NCBI GenBank assembly: GCA_950097015.1
Contig: CATNEN010000002.1
Span: 4,402,001-4,466,000, forward strand
Origin: Macrostomum hystrix
Taxonomy: Eukaryota; Animalia; Platyhelminthes
Length of the DNA stretch: 64,000 nt
Direction of reading: 5' to 3'
Part shown: positions 7,962-50,031 of the stretch, piece after piece
Position numbering within the stretch: position 1 is the stretch's first letter
Layout: each line of letters begins with the position of its first letter
Notes under the pieces: model-generated
What the model was told of the DNA's origin: nothing
Seen by the model: the letters and a program-made list of their open reading frames with translations, nothing else
Database searches by the model: none
Position numbers and translations under genes: made by a program

Positions 7962-8295
7962 AGAGGTTGTAGCCTAGTGAGAGGTTGTAGCCTAGTGGTT
8001 AGGGCGTCGGACTTACGACTTGAAGGTCGGGGGTTCGATTCCCGACTCCACTGAAACAATTTGTGTCCTTTAGCAAGACACTTAACTCTGCATTGCTTCA
8101 GTTCACCCAGCTGTTAAATGGGTACCAGCATCAGCTGGGATAATTGAAGGTGGGTGTGGCGTCCCCTCAGTCCGTGGACTGAACAGCTGTACGCAGCCTT
8201 CAGATGCGCCGCGCATTAGCTGCGGCTGTGCTGTCGGCTGCACATCTGGCCCGATTGGGGCAGGTGTAATAAATTATTATTATTATTAATTATTA
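7962..8295 (+). mobile_element. tRNA-derived CORE-SINE (family B), full length
   Basis: A box (TAGCCTAGTGG), B box (GTTCGATTCC), CORE-like TGTGTCCTTTAGCAAGACACTTAAC...CTTCAGTTCACCCAGCTGTTAAATGGG, and an (ATT)n tail. The first 18 bp are duplicated. Confidence 0.9.
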
Positions 8296-20529: not shown

Positions 20530-23300
20530 GACGAATACAATAATCTTCACGAGATTCAAAGACGGAGATAGAATAATCCTCATGAGAATCAAAGACGGAG
20601 ATAGAATCCTCATGAGAGTCAAAGACGGAGATAGAATAATCCTCATGAGAATCAAAGACGGAGATAGAATAATCCTCATGAGAATCAAAGACGGAGATAG
20701 AATAATCCTCACGAGAATCAAAGACGGGATGGAATAATCCTCACGAGATTCAAAGACGGAGATAGAATAATCCCCATGAGAGTCAAAGACGGAGATAGAA
20801 TAATCCCCATGAGAATCAAAGACGGAGACAGAATAATCCCCATGAGAATCAAAGACGGAGATAGAATAATCCCCATGAGAGTCAAAGACGGAGATAGAAT
20901 AATCCCCATGAGAATCAAAGACGGAGACAGAATAATCCCCATGAGAATCAAAGACGGAGATAGAATAATCCTCATGAGAATCAAAGACGGAGATAGAATA
21001 ATCCCCATGAGAATCAAAGACGGAGATAGAATAATCCTCATGAGATTCAAAGACGGAGATAGAATAATCCCCATGAGATTCAAAGACGGAGAAAGAATAA
21101 TCCTCATGAGAATCAAAGACGGAGAAAGAATAATCCTCATGAGAATCAAAGACGGAGATAGAATAATCCCCATGAGAATCAAAGACTGAGATAGAATAAT
21201 CCTCATGAGAATCAAAGACGGAGAAAGAATAATCCTCATGAGAATCAAAGACGGAGATAGAATAATCCCCATGAGAATCAAAGACTGAGATAGAATAATC
21301 CTCATGAGAATCAAAGACGGAGAAAGAATAATCCTCATGAGAATCAAAGACGGAGATAGAATAATCCTCACGAGAATCAAAGACGGGATAGAATAATTCT
21401 CATGAGATTCAAAGACGGAGATAGAATAATCCTCACGAGAATCAAAGACGGTGATAGAATAATCCTCATGAGAATCAAAGACGGAGATAGAATAATCCTC
21501 ATGAGAATCAAAGACGGAGACAGAACAATCCTCACGAGATTCAAAGACGGAGATAGAATAATCCTCACGATAATCAAAGACGGAGATAGAATAATCCTCA
21601 TGAGAATCAAAGACGGAGATAGAATAATCCCCATGAGAATCAAAGACGGGATAGAATAATCCTCACGATAATCAAAGACGGAGATAGAATAATCCTCATG
21701 AGATTCAAAGACGGAGATAGAATAATCCTCACAAGAGTCAAAGACGGAGATAGAATAATCCTCACGAGAATCAAAGACGGAGATAGAATCCTCATGGGAG
21801 TCAAAGACGGAGATAGAATAATCCTCACGATAATCAAAGACGGAGATAGAATAATCCTCATGAGAATCAAAGATGGAGATAGAATAATCCTCATGAGAAT
21901 CAAAGACGGAGATAGAATAATCCTCACGAGAGTCAAAAACGGAGATAGAATAATCCTCAAGAGAATCAAAGACGGAGATAGATTAATCCCCATGAGATTC
22001 AAAGACGGAGATAGAATAATCCTCACGAGATTCAAAGACGGAGATAGAATAATCCCCATGAGAGTCAAAGACGGAGATAGAATAATCCCCGTGAGAGTCA
22101 AAGACGGAGATAGAATAATCCCCGTGAGATTCAAAGACGGAGTTAGAACAATCCTCATGAGAATCAAAGACGGAGATAGAATAATCCTCATGAGAATCAA
22201 AGACGGAGATAGAATAATCCTCACGAGATTCAAAGACGGAGATAGAATAATCCCCATGAGAGTCAAAGACGGAGATAGAATAATCCCCGTGAGAGTCAAA
22301 GACGGAGATAGAATAATCCCCGTGAGATTCAAAGACGGAGTTAGAACAATCCTCATGAGAATCAAAGACGGAGATAGAATAATCCTCACGAGAATCAAAG
22401 ACGGGATAGAATAATCCTCACGATAATCAAAGACGGAGATAGAATAATCCTCATGAGAATCAAAGACGGAGATAGAATAATCCCCATGAGAATCAAAGAC
22501 GGGATAGAATAATCCTCACGATAATCAAAGACGGAGATAGAATAATCCTCATGAGAATCAAAGACGGAGATAGAATAATCCTCATGAGAATCAAAGACGG
22601 AGACAGAATAATCCTCATGAGAATCAAAGACGAATATAGAATAATCCTCATGAGAATCAAAGACGGAGATAGAATAATCCTCATGAGAATCAAAGATGGA
22701 GATAGAATAATCCTCATGAGAATCAAAGACGGAGATAGAATAATCCTCACGAGAGTCAAAGACGGAGATAGAATAATCCTCACGAGAATCAAAGACGGAG
22801 ATAGAATAATCCTCATGAGAGTCAAAGACGGAGATAGAATAATCCTCATGAGATTCAAAGACGGAGAAAGAATAATCCTCACGATAATCAAAGACGGTGA
22901 TAGAATAATCCTCACGAGAATCAAAGACGGAGACAGAATAATCCTCACGAGAATCAAAGACGGAGATAGAATAATCGTCACGAGAATCAAAGACGGAGAT
23001 AGAATAATCCTCACGAGAATCAAAGACGGAGATAGAATAATCCCCATGAGAATCAAAGACGGAGATAGAATATTCCTCATGAGAGTCAAAGACGGAGATA
23101 GAATAATCCTCATGAGATTCAAAGACGGAGAAAGAATAATCCTCATGAGATTCAAAGACGGAGAAAGAATAATCCTCACGAGAATCAAAGACGAATATAA
23201 TAGAATCTTCACGAGATTCAAAGACGATTATAGAAAAATCCCACATGAGAATCAAAGAAGAAGACGAAAACATCCTCACGAGAATCAAAGACGGAGACAG
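20530..23300. repeat. 33-bp minisatellite (GAGAATCAAAGACGGAGATAGAATAATCCTCAT) in the first iGluR intron
   Basis: About 80 monomers with recurring 1-bp and 3-bp deletion variants. The MRIKDGDRIIL ORFs are artefacts. Confidence 0.97.
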
Positions 23301-25705: not shown

Positions 25706-26685
25706 TAATTAGCAACAATAGCACTAGCAGCAGCAGCAGCAGCGGTAGCAACCAGTAGCAGCTGAGGGATCAGCAGCAGCACAAGCAGCACCAGCCCGGG
25801 TCATGGTCACTGCTGGATAAGTGGCGTAAGAACGAAAGCGTCCTAAATTGTTGCTGGTGGAGGGTCCTGCGACTGACCAGGCGCTACCACCTTTGCTCAC
25901 TGGCCGGCTCACGCCCCCGGCATGGCCGCGTCCGGTTCTCTGGTTGGTACGTCTGAGATGACGTCAGCGTTGACTAGCTCCGGGGAGGATGATATACTAT
26001 GGCTTGTGCTGGCAGCAACTACCCCCTCCGGTGTCCGGGATGATGCGTGGCTCACTCGCCTTGTCGGACGGCCTGGCCTATGCCCGCCTGGTGTGCTAGC
26101 CTATTGGGGTAGGGCTAAAAGAAAGCAAAGCAAAGAAAGCAGCAGCAGCAGCAGTAGTCGTCGGTCACCATCGCTACTGGCAGCCGGCGTCTCGCGCGAC
26201 TCATCGACGGGACCAATCGCCGGGAGTGAGTGGGTAAGCGGCTAGTGTCGCTGCCTCACTTTCCAATGGTCGCTGGTTCGTTCCTCCCTCCAAGTCACGA
26301 TTATTTCGGGCTTAGTTGGAGGTTTGCGAAGTAGTGACTTGCGGAGATGCACCTTATTCTGTGAAACCAAAGCTAATTAAAAAATAGCTTAACCCCTACC
26401 TTCTGCATGTCTGCTTGTTTTTGTTTGCGTTATGTGCGTTGCACCGAGTGTGAGGCATTGTATGGGGAGTTGGGCGTGTGTGCACCGGCCATGCGTGCTC
26501 TGAGCGGCGAAGTTTTACGAGCCGTCTGCGTGCGTGGCTTGGTCCTCTCGTCCCTACCCTTCAGGCATCTTAAGTTCTCCCCTGGTTTGGTCTGCTCTGT
26601 GCGTGTGCGGGCCTGGGGTGAGAGGCATTCCGGCTGCCGCCCCCTTCCCCGCTTGGCTTGCTGCTGTGTGTGAGGTGCCTGAGTC

Positions 26686-26913
26686 GCTCGCACCGGCGGG
26701 ACACAATGCCTGTGTGGTATGAGTCAGACCAGGCCTACGGGCTAAGGTCTGCGATGCCTCACACCTGCAGTCGTTTTTTGAGCAGGCCTGGCAGGAAGGA
26801 GCCCTGTACCTCCGGGTGCAGGGATCCCTCCACGCTGTCCCGTCAGCTGACCCATGGGTACACGTCCCGCGAGTGTTCAAGGCTGACCCTAGGGCAGCCG
26901 GACAGAATGGGCA
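26686..26913 (+). ncRNA. HDV-like self-cleaving ribozyme (predicted) at the LINE 5' terminus
   Basis: P1 GCTCGC(26686-91)/GCGAGT(26869-74) with a G1.U wobble; P2 CCCAT(26851-55)/ATGGG(26907-11); P3 GGG(26856-58)/CCC(26866-68); L3 TACACGT; P1.1 AC(26860-61)/GT(26875-76); P4 hairpin 26877-26902; J4/2 CAGA with putative catalytic C26903. G1 is the first base after the TSD. Confidence 0.85.
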
Positions 26914-26954
26914 ACAGCGCTGGATGACCCATCCAGGGCCTCTGGCCAAACTGG

Positions 26955-27607
26955 GTACCTCTAGCCCTGGCTGGAGGGAAAGGTGTCACCCTTTGACCTT
27001 AACAGGGTATGCGGCGAGTCCGCAGCTTTCGTGCACCTGTGCGTGATCAGGTACCTCTGGCTACGGCTCTGAGGGAGAGGTGTTACCCTTTGACCTTGAC
27101 AGGGTATGCGGCCAGTCCGCAGCGTCTCGCGCACCTGTGCGTGATCAGGTACCTCTGGCTACGGCTCTGAGGGAGAGGTGTTACCCTTTGACCTTGACAG
27201 GGTATGCGGCCAGTCCGCAGCGTCTCGCGCACCTGTGCGTGATCAGGTACCTCTGGCTACGGCTCTGAGGGAAAGGTGTCACCCTTTGACCTTAACAGGG
27301 TATGCGGCCAGTCCGCAGTTTTCGTGCACCTGTGCGTGATCAGGTGCCTCTGGCTACGGCTCTGAGGGAAAGGTGTCACCCTTTGACCTTAACAGGGTAT
27401 GCGGCCAGTCCGCAGCGTCTCGCGCACCTGTGCGTGATCAGGTACCTCTGGCTACGGCTCTGAGGGAAGGGTGTCACCCTTTGACCTTAACAGGGTATGC
27501 GGCCAGTCCGCAGCGCTCGTGCACCTGTGCGTGATCAGGTACCTCTGGCTACGGCTCTGAGGGACAGGTGTCACCCTTCGACCTCAACAGGGTACGCAGC
27601 CAGTCTG
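26955..27607 (+). repeat. Tandem array of 97-98-bp monomers in the LINE 5' UTR
   Basis: GAGGGA.AGGTG marks unit starts at 26974, 27071, 27169, 27267, 27364, 27462 and 27559; the copies are near-identical. Confidence 0.96.
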
Positions 27608-27742
27608 CGGGCCTGGCACTGCTTTAGGTGTCCTCTTATGCCTAAGGTCTCACCGCGCTGAGGGGCTGAAAGGTCCGGGGAGTCTATCCGGCCATTAGCG
27701 GTTTTTATTTTTATTCTCTTCTTTCTCTTTTTCCAGCGACCT

Positions 27743-29230
27743 ATGGAGTCCCACTACAGCTCCAGCACGTCCCAGGACCCTGCTGAAACGCCGACCCCGG
27801 CCGGCGACGCAGATCCTCAGGACCAGCGCCAGGGCGACACCGGTTCCACCGGCGCCCAAAATTCATCCTGCTCCTCCGCCACTCAGGAAAACACCAGAGC
27901 GGCTGGATCAAAGAGCAAACGCTCCCCTTCCACGCAAGCCCGCAGCCTCGCCCGCCTCCAGGAATTCCGGCGGCGAAAACAGGAAGTACGGTTGGCTGCG
28001 AAATCCGCGCCAACCACCGCCCCCGAGGAGGGGGCCGGCAACTCTGCGAACATCGCGGAGGAACCGGCACCCAACAAGGAGGCGGACTCCTCGCGCCGTC
28101 CGGGAAATCCGGAAGCGCGGAAAAGTGCCGCCCAGGCCTCTGGGGCATCCGGTTCCTCTCGCGGCGGAACCTCTCACAGTCATCCGGAAACTCCGACGAC
28201 TGCTGGGGGGCCCGTTGCGGGAGGCGCCGGCCAAACCACAAGGCCAAAGCGCACTTACGCTGCTATGGCAAAGAGGCAGCCGGCCTTGGTTATCCGAGGC
28301 CAGGAGACGCCCCTCACAACAGCGCAACTCGACCAGATCTGGCGCAGATTGGACTCCCATCTGGTCAAACTGGCACTGAGCGGCACTGTACTGCACGTCC
28401 TGAAGACCGACATCCAGGACCAAGCCCTCATTGTCCAGCCTGCCGACAACCAGTCCGGACAGCAACTCCTCGAGATGCTGAAATCCTTCGACTGGGGCAC
28501 GGAAATGGGCAACCTGTTTATCTACAGGGAGGACGAGCGCCCCCAGACACACCGTCATCGTGTTTGGATTCCAGCTCGCAGCGCCATCACCAACGCCGGA
28601 GAACTGCGCCGCCTGCTGTTGGCAATCCACCCGGATCTGCCAGCAAACGGTGTCGTGGTTCATGAAACCATCACCAGACCTGGTGGAGACGGTTTCACGG
28701 CCATCCTAGGATTGTCGGACAGCTGGATGCTCCGCTGCCCAGACATGTCCTACATCAGTGCAGGCCTCACTCGAATGCAGATTTTCAGCTTCGAGTCCGA
28801 CGCCACTCGCCCGCCGCCCCCGGAAAAGCGGAAACGGACGAACCAGAGCTCTGCCGGGCCCCTGCGCCCTGGAACACAGACTCCTGATCGTCACGACCAC
28901 TCCGAGGATGCGGACCCTATCAGGGGCAAAGCCGCGCGAGCCGCAACGACAGGCGGACGTGGTAAGGGCCGGAAACCCGCCCGCAACACCATCCGTGCTG
29001 GCTTGACTCAGCGCGCCAGACAGCTGTCGGACCCCAACAGTGGACGCCACCGCAGCACCACCCGGCCCAATGTTTCATCGGAACCCCCAGCGGAAAACCG
29101 GGTTGAGGACACGGACGCCGCTGTTGCGGCAGCCCCGGCCTCAACTCTGGATCCGATTCAGGAGGAACCGATGGAGCTCGGGCAAAACACCGGCGAGGAC
29201 GAGGAATCGCTCCTGAACAACTCGCCGTAG
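27743..29230 (+). CDS. LINE ORF1 protein (495 aa)
   Basis: Intact ORF with disordered ends and a central globular region. HRVWIP...LLAIHPDL...AILGL...YISAGL resembles the DUF4780-type ORF1 domain of LOA-like elements (recognised by eye, not searched). Confidence 0.88.
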
Positions 29231-29265
29231 GCCAGCAGATAGCCGCACGGACCGCCCCTCCTGGG

Positions 29266-32200
29266 GTGAGCTTCCTGCAGCTGAACCTGCACCACTGCAT
29301 CGCGGCCTCGACCAACCTGGCGCGTGTGGTGGACTTCGAAAAACCGGGCATCATCCTCCTCCAAGAGCCCTGGACGAAGAAAGGTAAGATTCCGAACATT
29401 CCTGCTGGTTTTGACTGTTTTTTCATGTCCCAAAACCCCAGGGCTGCTGTGTTCGCGACTACCGATCTTAAAGCTTGGTATAGACCAGACCTCTCTGACA
29501 AAGACCTCTGTGTCATCCAAACCAACCACATTCTCCCGAACCGCACCGTCATCATCGCCTCTATATACATTCCTGGTGACGGTCCTGCGGTTCCGCCCAG
29601 TCTCACTTCCCTCGTGGACTACTGCTCAGACCGCGACTTTGAGCTGCTGGTGGCAGGCGACATTAATGCCCACCACACCCACTGGGGCAGTGTTACCTCC
29701 AACTGCAGAGGCGAGGATCTCCTTGCCTACATCTGCACCACAAATATTGAGTTCTGCAACTCGGGTGGCACACCCACCTTTGACAATGGACGATGGACGG
29801 AGGTCCTTGACGCCACCCTCGCCTCTCAGGGCCTGATCCCTCTGATTAGGAACTGGCAGGTGTGGGACGAAGAGGAATCTCTGTCTGACCATCGCTTCAT
29901 TCGTTTCCGGTTGCTAAGCTCCTACTCCAAGCCTGGTATTCTGTGGAGAAGGAACGCCCGGAATACTGACTGGACGGCCTTTGCGGAATCCGTGAAGCGC
30001 CAGACCAACCAGTTAGAATCCGTTGTTCCTGCCACCTGTCAAGAAGTGGACGATCTGGCTGATCTACTCAGCATGACCATCTTGACAGCTCATGAAACCT
30101 CTTGCCCTCTTAAAGCCTACAAAGGCAAAAAATCCGCTCCCTGGTGGAACCCAGCGCTTGGAACCCTCCGGCGAAAGGCCAAATCCCTCCAGCGGATTGC
30201 GCGGAAAAGCAAGGACCCAGCTGACCTGACCGCCTACCAGAATGCGATTCGTGACTTTAAGCGTGACACCAGGAAAGCGAAGTCCGAAAAGTGGCGCCAA
30301 TACTGCTCCGAGCTGGAGGGCGCCCGCCCAACTTCTCGCGTTGTAAAAGCGCTCACTCTTGACAAAATGTCGAAGCTCTCAGTGATCAAAAGACCGGACG
30401 GCCGGCTTGCTGAGAATCCTGGCGAATCGCTGGACATCATGCTCGCCAGCGCCTTCCCCCAGACTGCGCCGCTTCAGGACCCGCCGGACCACACTCCGGG
30501 TGGACACATCCTTGCGACAACTATTATCACTAGAGAACGGACAGCTCGCGCTGCTAACTCCTTCTCGCCTTTTAAGTCGCCTGGACCTGACAACATTTAC
30601 CCCGCCTTCCTACATGAAGCGGTAAAAAATGACAGGTTCCTCGGCCTCCTTTGCAACCTGTTCAAGGCCTGTATCACCCTCGGGTACGTACCCAGGTCTT
30701 GGCAGGAAGCCACTATCGTCTTCATCCCCAAACCTGGGAAGGGAGACTACCACTCCGCCAAAGCCTTCCGCCCCATCAGCTTAACATCTTTCTTTCTTAA
30801 GCTGCTTGAAAGGCTTGTTCTTTGGCGCCTCCTTCACGTTGAGCTGAGGAACTCCCCGCTCTCCGCCAACCAGCACGCCTTTCGATCCGGACGTTCCATC
30901 GAAAGTGCTCTGCATGCCATTGTCGACAAGCTGGAGCGCGCCGTGCTTGGCACCGGTTTTGCTCTCTCGCTTTTCCTCGACATTGATGGTGCCTTCGACA
31001 ATGTGCTCTTCGGAGCCTTTAGGCGAGCCCTGGAACGCCGGGCTACGCACGAGCACCTCACCCGCTGGATCATGTATATGATCTCTCACCGAACTGCCAC
31101 CTCGCACCTGCTTGGACACTCCCGTTCTGTGAATGTCCAGAAGGGAGGCCCGCAGGGTGGCGTTCTCAGTCCGATCCTTTGGAACCTTGTCATGGACGAA
31201 CTGCTCTGCAGCCCTGACCCGGACCCGGTCCAAAAAATCGGCTATGCTGACGACGTCACCGCCACCGTGGCCGGACCGTCTCCCCCGGTCCTTAGAGACC
31301 TTCTGCAAGCTTTCATCCACCGTGCCGAACGCTGGGCCAATGGCTGCGGCCTCAAACTCTCTGAGTCCAAGACCGTCGCCATTATGTTCACCAGCAAACG
31401 AAACTGGAGGATTGAGCCTCTCCTTCTCTATAACAAACCAATCGCCATGGAGAAGCAAACCAGATGCTTAGGTGTCATCCTCGACCACAGGTTGAGCTGG
31501 ACACCTCACGTCAAATTCAAAACCCGTAAAGCTCTTGCGACGCTCGCGCAGATTCGCAGAGCCTTCGGCGCCACCTGGGGCCTCACCCCCCGCCGTCTCT
31601 GGTGGATTTACACTACCATTGTAAGACCGGCCATCTCTTTTGCCGGCTTCATCTGGAATAGTGCCCTGGAGACCAAAGGGGTCCTGGAGGCCCTAAACAA
31701 GGTGCAGGGCCGTGCTTGTCGAGCCTTCATGAGTGCGGCACCCTCCACTCCCTTCGCTAGCATGAATGCCTTCCTGGACCTTCCCCCTTTAGATCTTTTT
31801 ATCAAGGGGGAGGCGATGAAGACGGCTCGTCGTCTTCTGGACGCGGGTATCTCCATCCGGAAGCAACTTGCCTTCAGCAAGCGGAACCTCCAGGCCCATG
31901 GCGACCTCAGCCTACGGGACCTGGACGCAGCAGGAGGTCTCAAAATTCTCTCCGACGGAATCCCGTCGACGCTGTGCCCACCGCAAAAATTCAAAACCAG
32001 CATTCCGCCTCGCCAGGAAGTACGTGACCACGGCCAACCCCGTGAAATTCACTGCTTCACCGACGGATCGCAAATCAACTCGGTCTCTGGTTTCGGCTAC
32101 TGCATTATGTCCGGAGGGAAAACTGTGGCGACCTTCTCCCAGCACACCGGCATAAACTCTACTGTTTTCCAGAACGAAGTTCTGGCCATCAGCTCCTGCG

Positions 32201-32970
32201 CCCTGGAGCTGATCTACCAAAACGTCCATGGAGCAGAAATCTTCCTCCACTCGGACAGCCAGGCGGCGATCCATGCCCTTGGACGCACGCACACCTGCTC
32301 GCGCACAGTCCTTGACTGCGTCGCGCAACTCAACCGCTTAGGGACCCACAACAAGGTGTCCCTAAGGTGGATTCCAGGGCACTCTGGCCACCCTGGTAAC
32401 GAATTGGCCGACAGCCTCGCCAAGGCCGGTTCGACGGGTTCGCTTTTTGGCCCCGTGCCTGCGGTCTCCACCCCTACCGCCGTCGTCAACACTCGGATTA
32501 ACCAGTGGGTGACCTCAAAGCACAAGGACAGATGGATCAATACCGCCGATTGTCGGCAGTCTCGCGCTGCTGTCCCTTGTCCCTCCACTGCCCTTCGCAA
32601 AGCCTTGCTTGGACTGAACCGCAAGGACATCAGGGCAGTCACCATGGCCCTCTCTGGCCATGGCTGTTTCGCCAGGCACCGCTTCCTGCAAGGCAAAATC
32701 CGCAGTGAGGAATGCCCCTTCTGCCTCTCCTATGTTGAGGATGCAGAGCATTTTATTTGCGACTGCCCCGCCTTCACTCAGGACCGGCTCACCTATCTCG
32801 GCCCAAACCCGGATCTCCCCGACGTTTTCAGGCCTGAGAACATCTGCCAGCTCGTCCGATACCTGAGGGCCACCGGGCGAGCAACCCTCCACCTCCTGGA
32901 CACTCCGGAGGAGGACCGCGCTGCGGACGCCGGCACCACCGGATCCCCCTGCGCGACACCGCAGCTCTAG
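29266..32970 (+). CDS. LINE ORF2: AP endonuclease, reverse transcriptase, RNase H, zinc knuckle
   Basis: APE motifs QLNLHH, LLQEPW, GDINAHH, LDATL, SDH; RT motifs [30 protein letters not shown]; RNase [25 protein letters not shown]; CPFC...[10 protein letters not shown]. Confidence 0.97.
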
Positions 32971-33186
32971 TTGCCCGTGGTCGCCAGGGGCTAGCGGAAT
33001 GGGCGGCAACGCCTCCCCGCTGCATCCGGAAGATGCCCCCTGCAGCTAAGTCAAGTCAAGAGGTGCCTGAGTCCAGGGGTCTAGATGGCGCGATGGGCGA
33101 CTCCCGCCTAGTTCGCCGGCCTGGGGGCATGCCGTTCCTGCGCTTGTGCGTCAAGTGCCCCAGGCCCCCCTGCAATTAATAAAAAA

Positions 33187-45729: not shown

Positions 45730-46446
45730 CAACCTTTTTGAGGCCGCTTAAGCAAAGTAAATTGCAGTAAATTATAATTTAATTCTAACATTTTATATAC
45801 CTACTCTGTACTATTATCTACGGAGATCAATATACCTTTTTATGTGATATTACGCGTACATGCATGTGATGATCGCAATTAACATTATCAAACATTAAAT
45901 ACTAAAAGAAAATGGGATAAAAACCTCATAATATTTAAAATTAGTGCTTTCCATTTGAGTAAAGAAATGTAGTCAATGCAAGGTAAAATTACCTATCGCA
46001 ACTATGCCTTTTATCTACTTAAAGTAGTTTAACTTCGGAATGGATATTTCTTTAAATTGAATTTGCAAGCTACGTCGGTAAAGCTGTGCTCTGAATTTCT
46101 GGAATATTACCCAATCTCTCAGCGCCTCTCGGGTTACGCAAATCGCAAGCAAGAAAAAATTATCAAAGCAGGAAAAAAGGATACAGAAACCTATTCATGG
46201 CAAGGAAATTAGGCACAGATTTGAAGCGAATGGCATTGCTGTTGGCATCGAAACAGAGAATCTCATTTCCACATCTGCAGACGGCTGATCCAGACCTCCA
46301 TTAAACATTAGATGTGACTTCCGTCTGCTGCAATGTCCTTATTTTACCTTAGCAACTTATTGCACTCGTATTTACCGGTTAAATTAATGAAAGAATTACA
46401 CAATTAAAGTACGAGCGTACTGCATGATTAAGATTATTTGACTAAA

Positions 46447-46882
46447 ATTGTGTCACTCTGAAATTGCGTCACTCTGAGATTGTGTCACTCTGAGATTGTG
46501 TCACTCTGAGATTGTGTCACTCTGAGATTGAGTCACTCTGAGATTGTGTCACTCTGAGATTGTGTCACTCTGAGATTGAGTCACTCTGAGATTGTGTCAC
46601 TCTGAGATTGTGTCACTCTGAGATTGTGTCACTCTGAGATTGAGTCACTCTGAGATTGTGTCACTCTGAGATTGTGTCACTCTGAGATTGTGTCACTCTG
46701 AGATTGTGTCACTCTGAGATTGTGTCACTCTGAGATTGAGTCACTCTGAGATTGTGTCACTCTGAGATTGTGTCACTCTGAGATTGTGTCACTCTGAGAT
46801 TGAGTCACTCTGAGATTGTGTCACTCTAAGATTGTGTCACTCTGAGATTGAGTCACTCTGAGATTGTGTCACTCTGAGATCT
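46447..46882 (+). repeat. 16-bp tandem array (TTGTGTCACTCTGAGA), left arm of an inverted pair
   Basis: About 27 monomers, ending at CTGAGATCT. Confidence 0.96.
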
Positions 46883-47689
46883 AAAGAGATTTTCGGGTTT
46901 CAAAAGTTTCTCTGTTTTTTTAAAATACTTTTTTTGTAAGTCAGACAACTAGAGCGACGATAAGACTGCACCTATAGTTCGCACCGCCTCGTGCAATTTA
47001 CGGGTCTTTCAATTCGAAACGCTGGGCCTTCAGCTTGTCGTGACGCCAGACTAAAATAAATAGAATTCTCGGCTTTGAATGACAGCCTGCTGAATCTCAT
47101 CAGCAGCACCCGGCCTTGGCTTATTTAGAAGTTGATTCTCAATTGAGAATATCTCAAACACCGCTTTCTCCCGTGCAGCTTAGAAGGACACGCAAACAGC
47201 CCCCAACTCCGTGTCCAACCACGATGCGACTCTGTTAAAGCGGTTTTTAAAAAAAATGGTCTCTCTTTTTAAAATTCCAGCCAGGTTACTCGTCCTCGTC
47301 AGTCGAACCGGCCCAAATATTATCCTTGCATAAAGTTTTTTAAAAAGCTCATTGTGGAATATAATGGCTTCGTAATTGAGTGGAGTATTATTAAGTTGAG
47401 AGTCTGAAGTTACTACGTGTGTTCTACCAGTTGCAAGAGGTCTCATTCAGACTACTCACGATTCCACAGCAGCCTCGCGAGAGCTGACGGCTGCCTCGAT
47501 AAGCTTTTACCCTGCAGCTGACTCTGTTAAATTCTCGCCTCAACAAAAGTACATTGTGAGAGCCACGCTTTTCAACTGCGAGTTTGTGAGCTCGTCATTG
47601 GCCAGAGAAACGCTGAGAAGGCTGAGTCTGCTAATGCCTGCAAGTTCTGACAGTTTGCTTCCGACCCAACTCATGAATTTGATGTTAGG

Positions 47690-48262
47690 GAGGGAGAGAC
47701 TGCGAGGGAGGGAGAGACTGCGAGGTAGGGAGAGATTGCGAAGGAGGGAGAGACTGCGAGGGAGGGAGAGATTGCGATGAAGGGAGAGACTGTGATGGAG
47801 AGAGACTGCGAGGGAGAGAGACTGTGATGGAGGGAGAGCCTGCGAGGGAGGGAGAGACTGCGAGGGAGGGAGAGACTGCGAGGTAGGGAGAGATTGCGAT
47901 GGAGGGAGAGCCTGCGAGGGAGGGAGAGACTGTGATGGAGGGAGAGACTGCGAGGGAGAGAGACTGTGATGGAGGGAGAGCCTGCGAGGGAGGGAGAGAC
48001 TGCGAGGGAGGGAGAGACTGTGATGGAGGGAGAGACTGCGAGGGAGAGAGACTGTGATGGAGGGAGAGCCTGCGAGGGAGAGAGACTGCGATGGAGAGAG
48101 ACTGCGATGGAGGGAGACTGTGATGGAGAGAGACTGTGATGGAGGGAGAGCCTGCGAGGGAGGGAGAGACTGCGAGGGAGGGAGAGACTGCGAGAGAGGG
48201 AGAGACTGCAAGGGAGGGAGAGACTGCGAGGGAGGGAGAGACTGCGTGGGAGGGAGAAAAAG
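47690..48262. repeat. 18-bp purine-rich minisatellite (GAGGGAGGGAGAGACTGC variants)
   Basis: Directly visible; the overlapping ORFs are artefacts. Confidence 0.93.
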
Positions 48263-48339
48263 ACCACAGGGAGAGAGAATATAAGTGCAATCTGTCCATT
48301 TCGAGAAGCATTTCAACACATTTTTGTGGTTTCTTGCAG

Positions 48340-48626
48340 CACTTCGCATTCAATTCAACCGTCTGTCTGAAAAACTCGTGGCAGAATTTTCGGCTCTCAG
48401 GCGAGGCGGTGTTACTGGGGCCAAGATCTGGCTGCCTGATTCTTGGCAGGAATTCAGTGAAGCTCTTCGTGAAGCTTGTCGGGTGGAGCTTGTTTCCCCT
48501 GAGTGGCTGCTACAATCGAATCGACGTCTGCACTTCTCAGACCTCGCCGCGTTGATGCGGAATTTCTTCCCAAACAGCCCGGCGGCCCCGGGCGCGAGCT
48601 CTCCCACAGAGATCAGTTTTCTCTGA
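48340..48626 (+). CDS. Candidate terminal exon of an unidentified gene
   Basis: Strong acceptor TTTTGTGGTTTCTTGCAG and non-repetitive frame LRIQFNRLSEKLVAEF...CRVELVSPEWLLQS...EISFL*. Upstream exons could not be assigned. Confidence 0.35.
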
Positions 48627-48731
48627 CATCCTCATTTTTGGCGCGTTGATTTTTCTATAATGGACGGGAAATTGAGCTGCATATTTGAAATACTCACCTC
48701 TAGCTGCTCTGCGCCATTCCGGAACGGAATG

Positions 48732-50031
48732 AGATCTCAGAGTGACTCAATATCAGAGTGACACAATCTCAGAGGGACTCAAGATCAGAGTGACACAATC
48801 TCAGAGGGACTCAAGATCAGAGTGACACAATCTCAGAGGGACTCAAGATCAGAGTGACACAATCTCAGAGGGACTCAAGATCAGAGTGACACAATCTCAG
48901 AGGGACTCAAGATCAGAGTGACACAATCTCAGAGTGACACAATTTAAGAGTGACACAATCTCAGGGTGACACAATCTCAGAGTGACACAATCTCAGAGTG
49001 ACACAATCTCAGAGTGACTCAATCTCAGAGTGACACAATTTAAGAGTGACACAATCTCAGAGTGACACAATCTCTGAGTGAGACAATCTCAGAGTGACTC
49101 AATCTCAGAGTGACTCAATCTCAGAGTGACTCAATCTCAGAGTGACACGATCTCAGAGTGACACGACCTCTGAGTGACACGACCTCAGAGTGAGCCAATC
49201 TCAGAGTGACACAATCTCAGAGTGACTCAATCTCAGAGTGACACAATCTCAGAGTGACACAATCTCAGAGGGACTCAATCTCAGAGGGACACAATCTCAG
49301 AGGGACTCAATCTCAGAGTGACACAATCTCAGAGTGACACAATCTCAGAGTGACACAATCTCAGAGTGACACAATCTCAGAGTGACACAATCTCAGAGTG
49401 ACACAATCTCAGAGGGACTCAATCTCAGAGTGACACAATCTCAGAGTGACTCAATCTCAGAGTGACTCAATCTCAGAGTGACTCAATCTCAGAGTGACAC
49501 GATCTCAGAGTGACACGACCTCTGAGTGACACGACCTCAGAGTGAGCCAATCTCAGAGTGACACAATCTCAGAGTGACACAATCTCAGAGTGACTCAATC
49601 TCAGAGTGACACAATCTCAGAGTGACTCAATCTCAGAGTGACACAATCTCAGAGTGACTCAATCTCAGAGTGAGACAATCTCAGAGTGACTCAATCTCAG
49701 AGTGACTCAATCTCAGAGTGACACGACCTCTGAGTGACACAGTCTCTGAGTGAGACAATCTCTGAGTGACACAATCTCAGAGTGACACAATCTCAAAGTG
49801 ACACAATCTCAAAGTGACTCAATCAAAATGTGACACGATCTCAAAGTGACACAATCTCAGAGTGACACAATCTCAGAGTGAGACAATCTCTGAGTGACAC
49901 AATCTCAGAGTGACACAGTCTCAGAGTGAGACAATCTCAGAGTGACACAATCTCAAAGTGACACAATCTCAAAGTGACTCAATCAAAATGTGACACGATC
50001 TCAAAGTGACACAATCTCAGAGTGACACAAT
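48732..50031 (-). repeat. 16-bp tandem array (TCTCAGAGTGACACAA), right arm, inverted relative to 46447-46882
   Basis: About 80 monomers of the reverse-complement unit, starting at AGATCTCAG. Includes a 32-bp dimer sub-array at about 48770-48925. Confidence 0.96.

What the first reader, a model, noticed from the sequence alone, without database searches (positions are those of the whole stretch)
26686..26913. HDV-like ribozyme starting exactly at the first nucleotide of an intact LINE
Seen: every element of the HDV/CPEB3 nested double pseudoknot can be built in the correct order: P1 (GCTCGC/GCGAGT, G.U at the cleavage site), P2 (CCCAT/ATGGG), P3 (GGG/CCC), L3 TACACGT (CPEB3 has UUCACGU), P1.1, P4 (GGCTG-A-CCC-TA-GGG-CAGCC) and J4/2 C-A-G-A. 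P1.1 is AC/GU instead of the usual CC/GG, a compensatory change unlikely by chance. G1 (26686) is the base right after the 14-bp TSD, an independent marker of the RNA 5' end. Established: HDV-like ribozymes define the 5' ends of R2, RTE, LOA (Baggins), R1-group and L1Tc elements. Inference: this family excises its own 5' end from read-through host transcripts. I know of no description of this element, and the AC/GU P1.1 with a 6-bp P1 is an unusual variant.
Basis: partly seen in the sequence, partly recalled or inferred. Interest (0 to 1): 0.9.

Follow-up and report, generated by a model that had tools for sequence, protein, structure and literature searches.

The report
HDV-like ribozyme heading a flatworm LINE
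The first 226 bases of an intact jumping gene (a LINE) in a flatworm genome fold into the hepatitis-delta-type self-cutting RNA shape, and related elements keep that shape through matched base changes, so it is very probably a real ribozyme that trims the element's RNA to its exact start; this is a known trick, seen here in a new family.

Summary
Window 26686-33059 is a full-length LINE with ORF1 and an ORF2 carrying endonuclease, reverse transcriptase and RNase H domains. It is flanked by an exact 14-bp target-site duplication. Public contigs show the empty site, and other copies start at exactly 26686.

Bases 26686-26911 form every helix of an HDV-like double pseudoknot. The 159-nt J1/2 insert folds into a closed domain with a 9-bp closing helix (P1.2).

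"All helices can be drawn" is weak evidence alone: a loose descriptor hits hundreds of times per strand. A strict descriptor finds one complete hit in both strands of the window, at this site, and none in 2 Mb of shuffles.

The decisive evidence is comparative.
- A diverged family (L001, ORF1 47% identical) starts its contig at the homologous G1.
- L001 shows compensatory changes in P1, P1.1, P1.2, P2 and P4.
- Two further families keep the core.
- L3 (T...CGT) and a C four bases before the P2 3' strand are invariant.

No Rfam model matches, and cleavage is untested.

This is a new member of a known kind. 6-bp P1 helices, 1-2-bp P1.1 and large structured J1/2 domains are all published. Earlier notes of this scan report the same kind of ribozyme on other DNA of this genome. 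Interest is moderate to low.

The parts
26672..26685 (+). 5' copy of the 14-bp target-site duplication
   Evidence: Exact repeat of 33060-33073. Empty-site contigs continue from 26685 into the sequence after 33073.
26686..26691 (+). P1 5' strand (GCTCGC). G26686 is the predicted cleavage product 5' end and the first base of the LINE.
   Evidence: Pairs 6/6 with 26869-74. It is the only P1 candidate within 200 nt upstream of the core. Five contigs of run X1 and one of X11 start the element here with unlike flanks.
26695..26844 (+). Structured J1/2 peripheral domain, closed by a 9-bp helix P1.2 (26695-26703 with 26836-26844)
   Evidence: The insert folds on its own to a closed multi-branch domain, with the same architecture in L001. 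P1.2 differs from L001 by 5 double and 1 single compensatory change. The 5' half is 84% identical to L001 over 57 nt.
26851..26855 (+). P2 5' strand (CCCAT)
   Evidence: Pairs 5/5 with 26907-11. Relatives have different sequences that still pair: 6/6, 6/6 and 7/7.
26856..26868 (+). P3 (GGG/CCC) with L3 TACACGT (26859-26865)
   Evidence: P3 is invariant in 4 families. L3 keeps T at position 1 and CGT at positions 5-7 in all four.
26869..26874 (+). P1 3' strand (GCGAGT)
   Evidence: Two positions covary with the 5' strand in L001 (T-A to C-G, C-G to T-A).
26875..26876 (+). 3' side of P1.1 (GT), pairing with C26861 and A26860 of L3
   Evidence: L001 has AG pairing with T and C of its L3 (double change). 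L003 and L012 keep only the C-G pair.
26881..26899 (+). P4 hairpin
   Evidence: Present with unrelated sequences of 5-9 bp in all four families.
26900..26906 (+). J4/2, with the candidate catalytic C at 26903
   Evidence: A C lies four bases before the P2 3' strand in all four families. Its catalytic role is inferred from the HDV family, not tested.
26907..26911 (+). P2 3' strand (ATGGG)
26954..27608 (+). About 6.7 tandem 97-98-bp monomers in the 5' UTR, downstream of the ribozyme
   Evidence: Self-BLAST. The monomer is shared with L003 and L013 but not with L001.
27743..29230 (+). ORF1 (495 aa, no Pfam family)
   Evidence: The only named homologues are Macrostomum lignano proteins.
29266..32970 (+). 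ORF2 (1234 aa): AP-endonuclease, reverse transcriptase, RNase H
   Evidence: Pfam matches for Exo_endo_phos(_2), RVT_1 and RNase_H.
32971..33059 (+). 3' UTR ending in an (AAGTC)-type short repeat, with no poly(A)
   Evidence: Sequence. 83-88% identical to L001.
33060..33073 (+). 3' copy of the target-site duplication

Best explanation
Bases 26686-26911 encode an HDV-like self-cleaving ribozyme, a nested double pseudoknot of P1, P1.1, P2, P3 and P4. It forms the 5' end of an intact RNase-H-bearing LINE.

Proposed mechanism: transcripts that enter the element from upstream fold co-transcriptionally. The 159-nt J1/2 insert forms its own closed domain, and its 9-bp closing helix (P1.2) brings the distal P1 5' strand next to P2. 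C26903 in J4/2 then catalyses scission 5' of G26686. That leaves an RNA starting at the element's first base, so full-length new copies begin exactly there.

Shown: the fold, its conservation and covariation, and the coincidence of G1 with the element's boundary in two families.

Inferred: catalysis, the role of C26903, and the source of the transcripts.
For: (1) Boundary. The TSD is exact. Empty-site contigs exist, and at least 6 contigs in two organisms carry the element starting at 26686 with unlike flanks.

(2) Specificity. The strict descriptor gives one complete hit in 128 kb and none in 2 Mb of shuffles.

(3) Thermodynamics. With only the P2 strands held single-stranded, the unconstrained minimum-energy fold of both the window and L001 is exactly P1 + P1.2 + P3 + P4.

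(4) L001 (ORF1 47%, ORF2 74% identical). Its contig starts at the homologous G1 (GCCTGC), which is the only complement of its changed P1 3' strand GCAGGC within 250 nt.

(5) Covariation. Window against L001 shows 2 double and 1 single change in P1, and 5 double and 1 single in P1.2. P1.1 changes from A-T/C-G to C-G/T-A. P2 and P4 have different sequences but pair fully. Across four families 96 of 96 helix cells pair, against 32-43% when the 3' strands are slid.

(6) Core nucleotides. L3 T...CGT and the C four bases before the P2 3' strand are invariant in four families whose ORF1s are 33-47% identical where measured (L001 and L003).

(7) Conservation beyond the protein. The core of L003 is 78% identical in DNA although its ORF1 is 33% identical.

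(8) No variant at 10% share or more is listed in P1 or the core among genomic copies, while eight are listed in J1/2.

(9) Architecture. It matches the published P1.2 'pinch' domain (PMC4908430) and the long J1/2 loops of R2 ribozymes (PMC3774820).
Against: - No Rfam HDV-family model matches the window or the compact core of L003.
- The three bases after the candidate catalytic C are AGA, GTG, TGC and TGA in the four families. From my own knowledge of HDV and CPEB3, those ribozymes have G-A-A there.
- P2 is only 5 bp, and 3+6 nt of linkers flank P1.2. That combination slowed an engineered mosquito ribozyme (PMC4908430).
- The distal P1 is seen in only two families, because the other two contigs are cut inside J1/2.
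- There are no cleavage or RNA 5'-end data. The runs available were assembled contigs only.
Confidence: 0.8

Rival explanations
1. The conserved 5' structure is a non-catalytic RNA or DNA element, such as an internal promoter, an ORF-protein binding site or a translation element. The uniform 5' end at 26686 comes from transcription starting at +1, as in LINEs with internal promoters.
For: The 5' half of J1/2 is the best conserved part of the 5' UTR: 84% over 57 nt against 33% for the whole UTR. A uniform 5' end is also what an internal promoter gives. No Rfam match. No cleavage data.
Against: A promoter or protein site does not explain compensatory changes in a pseudoknotted set of five helices. 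Nor does it explain the invariant L3 and J4/2 C at the positions of the HDV active site, or P1 pairing that starts on the very first base in two families. The two functions can also coexist, as in L1Tc Pr77/L1TcRz (PMC3383444).
Confidence: 0.12
2. The ribozyme is real, but the operative P1 is formed by the 'local' hexamer just upstream of P2 (window 26838-26843, homologous to GCTCGC at L003 76-81). It would then cut about 150 nt inside the element, or switch between two cut sites.
For: The local hexamer complements the P1 3' strand at 6/6 (L003), 5/6 (L001), 5/6 (L012) and 4/6 (window) positions, compared by eye on the sequences; about 2.25 of 6 would be expected by chance (my estimate). It changes in step with the P1 3' strand in L001.
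Against: - In the window the local pairing has an internal C-A mismatch, and its first base is unpaired in three of four families.
- The strand-swapped conformer is 17 kcal/mol (window) and 12 kcal/mol (L001) less stable.
- Element copies start at 26686, not near 26838.
- The first 75 bases of L003 align to the window's J1/2 from about 26776, weakly (score 31 against shuffle mean 20.4, sd 3.7, max 36). That fits a contig cut inside J1/2, where the hexamer is simply the P1.2 3' strand.
Confidence: 0.05
3. Chance: a GC-rich 5' UTR that happens to allow an HDV-like drawing.
For: The loose descriptor hits hundreds of times per strand. With J1/2 up to 300 nt, many pairings are available.
Against: The strict descriptor is unique in the window and absent from shuffles. 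The hit is anchored on an independently defined boundary. It is conserved with covariation in families with 33-47% ORF1 identity.
Confidence: 0.02

Closest known systems
HDV-like ribozymes at the 5' ends of non-LTR retrotransposons (Drosophila R2, R4/Dong, Baggins1, RTE elements, L1Tc)
   Same: Nested double pseudoknot at the very start of the element. The cleavage site is the first base of P1 and of the element. The proposed role is release from co-transcripts (PMC3774820, PMC3185411, PMC3383444).
   Different: A different host lineage (a flatworm, probably Macrostomum by protein hits) and a different LINE family, with an RNase H domain and a short-repeat 3' tail. The exact clade was not determined here. 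No activity data. In Schistosoma mansoni the ribozymes reported for LINEs are twister variants (PMC8501958). The planarian R2 ribozyme cuts 28 nt upstream in the rRNA (PMC3774820).
Large HDV-like ribozymes with a structured J1/2 (P1.2) domain: mosquito drz-Agam-2-1, and silkmoth R2 with a J1/2 loop of about 250 nt
   Same: A long insert between P1 and P2 that closes with a helix next to both. Published work shows such a domain accelerates cleavage by 'pinching' P1 and P2 together (PMC4908430). Part of the silkmoth loop is required for activity (PMC3774820).
   Different: Here the domain is a 159-163-nt multi-branch fold. Its 5' half is more conserved in sequence than the catalytic core between two families. 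P2 is short (5-7 bp), not the 12 bp of Agam-2.
Mammalian CPEB3 ribozyme
   Same: As I recall it (not tested here), CPEB3 has L3 UUCACGU, a G-U after P1, and a one-pair P1.1 with a U.U. L003 and L012 show that same P1.1 state, and the window has L3 UACACGU.
   Different: CPEB3 is intronic, compact and has a 7-bp P1. The Rfam CPEB3 model does not match this sequence.

Membership tests
HDV-like self-cleaving ribozymes | Strand order P1-P2-P3-L3-P3'-P1'-(P1.1)-P4-J4/2-P2', giving a nested double pseudoknot | tested here: met
   all helices pair fully in the window, L001, L003 and L012.
HDV-like self-cleaving ribozymes | The cleavage site is the first nucleotide of P1, so the RNA product starts at G1 | tested here: inconclusive
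   At the DNA level G1 coincides with the element boundary: TSD, empty site and other copies, start of the L001 contig. No RNA-end or cleavage data.
HDV-like self-cleaving ribozymes | P1.1 of one or two pairs between L3 and the bases after P1 | tested here: met
   2 bp in the window (A-T, C-G), 2 bp in L001 (C-G, T-A), and 1 bp (C-G) in L003 and L012.
HDV-like self-cleaving ribozymes | A conserved cytosine in J4/2 (the general acid, C75 in HDV) | tested here: met
   A C lies four bases before the P2 3' strand in all four families; it is C26903 in the window. Its function was not tested.
HDV-like self-cleaving ribozymes | Helices supported by covariation | tested here: met
   double changes in P1 (2), P1.2 (5), P1.1, P2 and P4. 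P3 is invariant, so it says nothing either way. Only 2-4 sequences are available.
HDV-like self-cleaving ribozymes | Match to a curated Rfam covariance model of the family | tested here: not met
   No HDV, CPEB3 or drz family hit at E<=10 on window 26400-27200 or on L003 40-200. I take this as weak evidence: in my understanding these models are narrow, do not encode the pseudoknot, and would not tolerate a 159-nt insert.
HDV-like self-cleaving ribozymes | Mg2+-dependent self-scission giving 2',3'-cyclic phosphate and 5'-OH ends | not testable with these tools
   Needs in vitro transcription.
Large HDV-like ribozymes with a P1.2 peripheral domain | The J1/2 insert forms a stable domain whose closing helix lies next to P1 and P2 | tested here: met
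   a 9-bp closing helix 3-4 nt from P1 and 6-7 nt from P2 in the window and L001. It covaries.
LINE (non-LTR retrotransposon), RNase-H-bearing group | AP-endonuclease, RT and RNase H in ORF2, an ORF1, a TSD, and no LTRs | tested here: met
   Assignment to a clade (earlier notes say LOA-like) was not tested.

The most novel reading that the evidence does not exclude
The long J1/2 insert may be a functional module rather than a passive spacer. Four strands covary together. The P1 5' strand resembles the P1.2 3' strand, and the P1 3' strand resembles the P1.2 5' strand. A 5-bp hairpin between the P1 5' strand and the adjacent P1.2 5' strand is possible in both full-length families.

This could be a programmed strand exchange. 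The 5' hairpin would shield the P1 strand until the P1.2 3' strand is transcribed about 150 nt later, timing cleavage to co-transcriptional folding. The highly conserved 5' half of the domain could also double as an internal promoter or protein-binding site, as in the L1Tc Pr77/ribozyme dual system.
Probability: 0.12. Interest if true: 0.6.

Novelty: new member of a known kind. Interest (0 to 1): 0.35.

Why it matters
It adds a well-supported HDV-like ribozyme to an apparently active LINE family of a free-living flatworm. In flatworms the published cases I found are the twister variants of Schistosoma LINEs and the planarian R2 ribozyme. It supports the view that many LINEs rely on co-transcription plus self-cleavage rather than on their own promoter. 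It also provides a natural pair of diverged large-J1/2 ribozymes for testing how peripheral domains control HDV-like catalysis. It does not change the general picture.

Tried and rejected
- Rfam at gathering and permissive thresholds on the window and on the compact L003 core: no HDV-family hit.
- My first, loose motif descriptor was useless as evidence: hundreds of hits.
- RNAalifold on a MAFFT alignment of the window and L001 was misled by misaligned 3' halves. It did not recover the fold, though it picked out the 5' hairpin. I therefore counted pairs on explicit coordinates.
- Contigs for P0006, P0023 and P0126 carried no DNA.
- L011, L013 and L014 do not reach the ribozyme.
- L002 and L004, a sister subclade with a DUF4780-type ORF1, show no strict core in their first 1.5 kb.
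- Reading L003 as a compact ribozyme with its own local P1 was considered and judged less likely, because its first 75 bases align to the interior of the window's J1/2, although that alignment is only marginally above shuffles.
- The second strict 'core' in the window (45932-46026) is AT-rich, has no P1 partner and is not at an element end, so I take it as chance.
- Only assembled contigs were available for the public runs, so no RNA 5' ends could be mapped.

Full report
**What is there.** Window 26686-33059 (+) is a full-length LINE. It has a 1057-nt 5' UTR, ORF1 (27743-29230, 495 aa, no Pfam family) and ORF2 (29266-32970, 1234 aa). ORF2 carries AP-endonuclease, reverse transcriptase and RNase H domains. 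An 89-nt 3' UTR ends in a short AAGTC-type repeat rather than poly(A). The element is flanked by an exact 14-bp duplication, GAGGTGCCTGAGTC, at 26672-85 and 33060-73. The only named protein relatives are Macrostomum lignano predictions, so the host is a flatworm, probably of that genus.

**The boundary is independent of the RNA model.** I laid assembled contigs of four public runs on 26300-27500.
- The upstream flank is itself a high-copy repeat.
- Six contigs run from 26685 straight into the sequence that follows 33073 in the window. That is the empty site.
- Five contigs of one run and one contig of a run from another organism carry the element from exactly 26686, preceded by unrelated sequence.

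So 26686 is the first base of the element in many copies.

That alone is weak. A loose HDV descriptor allowing J1/2 up to 300 nt gives about 300-400 hits per strand of this window. A strict descriptor requires P2 adjacent to P3, a 3-bp P3, a 7-8-nt L3, a 6-bp P1 directly after P3', a 2-bp P1.1, a P4 hairpin, and a C four bases before the P2 3' strand. It finds two cores in 128 kb, and only one has a P1 partner, which starts at 26686. Shuffles give 0.06 cores per 10 kb and no complete motif in 2 Mb. The descriptor was tuned after seeing the candidate, so this is an order of magnitude, not a P-value. When only the P2 strands are kept single-stranded, the unconstrained minimum-energy fold of 26686-26915 is exactly P1 + P1.2 + P3 + P4.

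**Comparative evidence.** ORF1 and ORF2 searches led to three contigs that reach the region.

L001 is a Logan contig with ORF1 47% and ORF2 74% identical.
- It starts at the homologous G1 with GCCTGC.
- Its core lies at 170-237, and its P1 3' strand is GCAGGC. The only complement within 250 nt upstream is the first six bases of the contig.
- Against the window, P1 has two double compensatory changes and one G.U-to-G-C change.
- P1.1 changes from A-T/C-G to C-G/T-A.
- P2 and P4 have different sequences and pair fully.

L003 is a JGI metagenome contig with ORF1 33% identical. L012 is a second Logan contig. Both keep the core with their own P2 and P4 sequences. Both contigs are cut inside J1/2, so their distal P1 strands are not visible. 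The first 75 bases of L003 align to the window's J1/2 from about 26776, though this alignment scores only marginally above shuffles.

Across the four families 96 of 96 helix cells pair. When the 3' strands are slid by 1-3 nt, 32-43% pair. The helices were defined on these same sequences, so this control flatters them somewhat.

The unpaired positions that make up the HDV active site are constant. L3 is T-N-N-N-C-G-T in all four, and a C lies four bases before the P2 3' strand in all four. The L003 core is 78% identical in DNA to the window's although the ORF1s are only 33% identical.

Among genomic copies, variants at 10% share or more are listed at eight J1/2 positions. None is listed in P1 or the core, but 27 variants were not shown.

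**The J1/2 insert.** It is 159 nt in the window and 163 nt in L001. In both it folds on its own into the same closed multi-branch domain. The closing helix is 9 bp: window 26695-26703 with 26836-26844, and L001 11-19 with 154-162. It lies 3-4 nt from P1 and 6-7 nt from P2, and differs between the two by five double and one single compensatory change. This is the 'P1.2' peripheral domain described for large HDV-like ribozymes, where it accelerates cleavage by bringing P1 and P2 together (PMC4908430). The silkmoth R2 ribozyme has a J1/2 loop of about 250 nt, part of which is required for activity (PMC3774820). The same papers state that P1 is 6 or 7 bp and P1.1 one or two pairs.

**Mechanism proposed.** Transcripts that read into the element fold as they are made. 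The J1/2 domain closes, P1 forms between the first six bases and 26869-74, and the core assembles. C26903 then promotes scission 5' of G26686. The RNA starts at the element's first base, and full-length reverse transcripts reproduce that end. The structure and its conservation are shown. Catalysis, the identity of the catalytic base and the origin of the transcripts are inferred from the HDV family and from other LINEs (PMC3774820, PMC3185411).

**Evidence against, and rivals.**
- No Rfam HDV-family model matches the window or the compact core of L003.
- The three bases after the conserved C vary (AGA, GTG, TGC, TGA). From my own knowledge, HDV and CPEB3 have G-A-A there.
- P2 is short, and the linkers around P1.2 total 9 nt. 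That combination slowed an engineered mosquito ribozyme (PMC4908430).
- An internal promoter starting at +1 would also give uniform 5' ends, and the 5' half of J1/2 is the best conserved stretch of the 5' UTR: 84% over 57 nt against 33% overall. But a promoter does not explain pseudoknot covariation, and the two functions coexist in L1Tc (PMC3383444).

**A local alternative P1.** The hexamer just upstream of P2 (window 26838-43) is the P1.2 3' strand. By eye on the sequences, it complements the P1 3' strand at 4/6, 5/6, 5/6 and 6/6 positions in the four families, and it changes in step in L001. The P1 5' strand can also form a 5-bp hairpin with the adjacent P1.2 5' strand in both full-length families; RNAalifold picks this hairpin out. 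The strand-swapped conformer is 12-17 kcal/mol less stable, and copies do not start near 26838. I therefore read it as at most a transient folding intermediate, and record it as the most novel reading not excluded.

**Comparison and novelty.** HDV-like ribozymes that define LINE 5' ends are established for R2, R4/Dong, Baggins, RTE and L1Tc (PMC3774820, PMC3185411). A full-text search for Macrostomum with ribozyme found nothing relevant. In flatworms the literature I found reports twister variants in Schistosoma LINEs (PMC8501958) and a planarian R2 ribozyme (PMC3774820). Earlier notes of this scan report HDV-like ribozymes at LINE 5' ends elsewhere in this same genome. They include 228-234-nt forms, one of which lies 4.3 Mb before this window's start. 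Those notes are unchecked leads. They agree with what I find but were not used as evidence.

**Verdict.** This is a new member of a known kind, of moderate to low interest.

Noticed in passing
window 26686-26703, 26836-26844, 26869-26874; L001 1-19, 154-162, 189-194: Four strands covary together. The P1 5' strand resembles the P1.2 3' strand, and the P1 3' strand resembles the P1.2 5' strand. A 5-bp hairpin between P1 5' and P1.2 5' is possible in both families, with one double compensatory change. The hexamer before P2 complements the P1 3' strand in all four families. This may be a folding switch or a relic of a duplication.
   Followed up: partly
window 26714-26770 and L001 30-86: The 5' half of the J1/2 domain is 84% identical between two families whose 5' UTRs are otherwise about 33% identical. 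It contains a conserved nested hairpin. It is a candidate second function, such as a promoter or a protein-binding site.
   Followed up: partly
window 26954-27608: About 6.7 tandem monomers of 97-98 bp lie between the ribozyme and ORF1. The monomer also occurs in L003 (232-300) and L013 but not in L001.
   Followed up: partly
window 26300-26685 and 33074 onward: The LINE sits inside another high-copy repeat. Public contigs show very high summed depth there, several internal deletions ('skips') and unoccupied copies.
   Followed up: no
window 32971-33059 and L001 3' end: The 3' UTR is 83-88% identical between the two families, more than ORF2 DNA (74%). This fits a LINE whose reverse transcriptase recognises its own 3' end.
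   Followed up: no
window 26912-26960; L001 238-290; L003 153-200: A block just downstream of the P2 3' strand (GCAAC-R-GCGC..., then GGCYAAA..GGTAC) is conserved in three families. Its function is unknown, and it is outside the ribozyme as drawn.
   Followed up: no
window 7981-8050: The only Rfam match at gathering score in the window is a tRNA (33.3 bits) with a shortened T arm.
   Followed up: no
window about 1500-2600+, 20596-22000+, 46456-49225+: Large minisatellite arrays with periods of 21, 33 and 16 bp.
   Followed up: no
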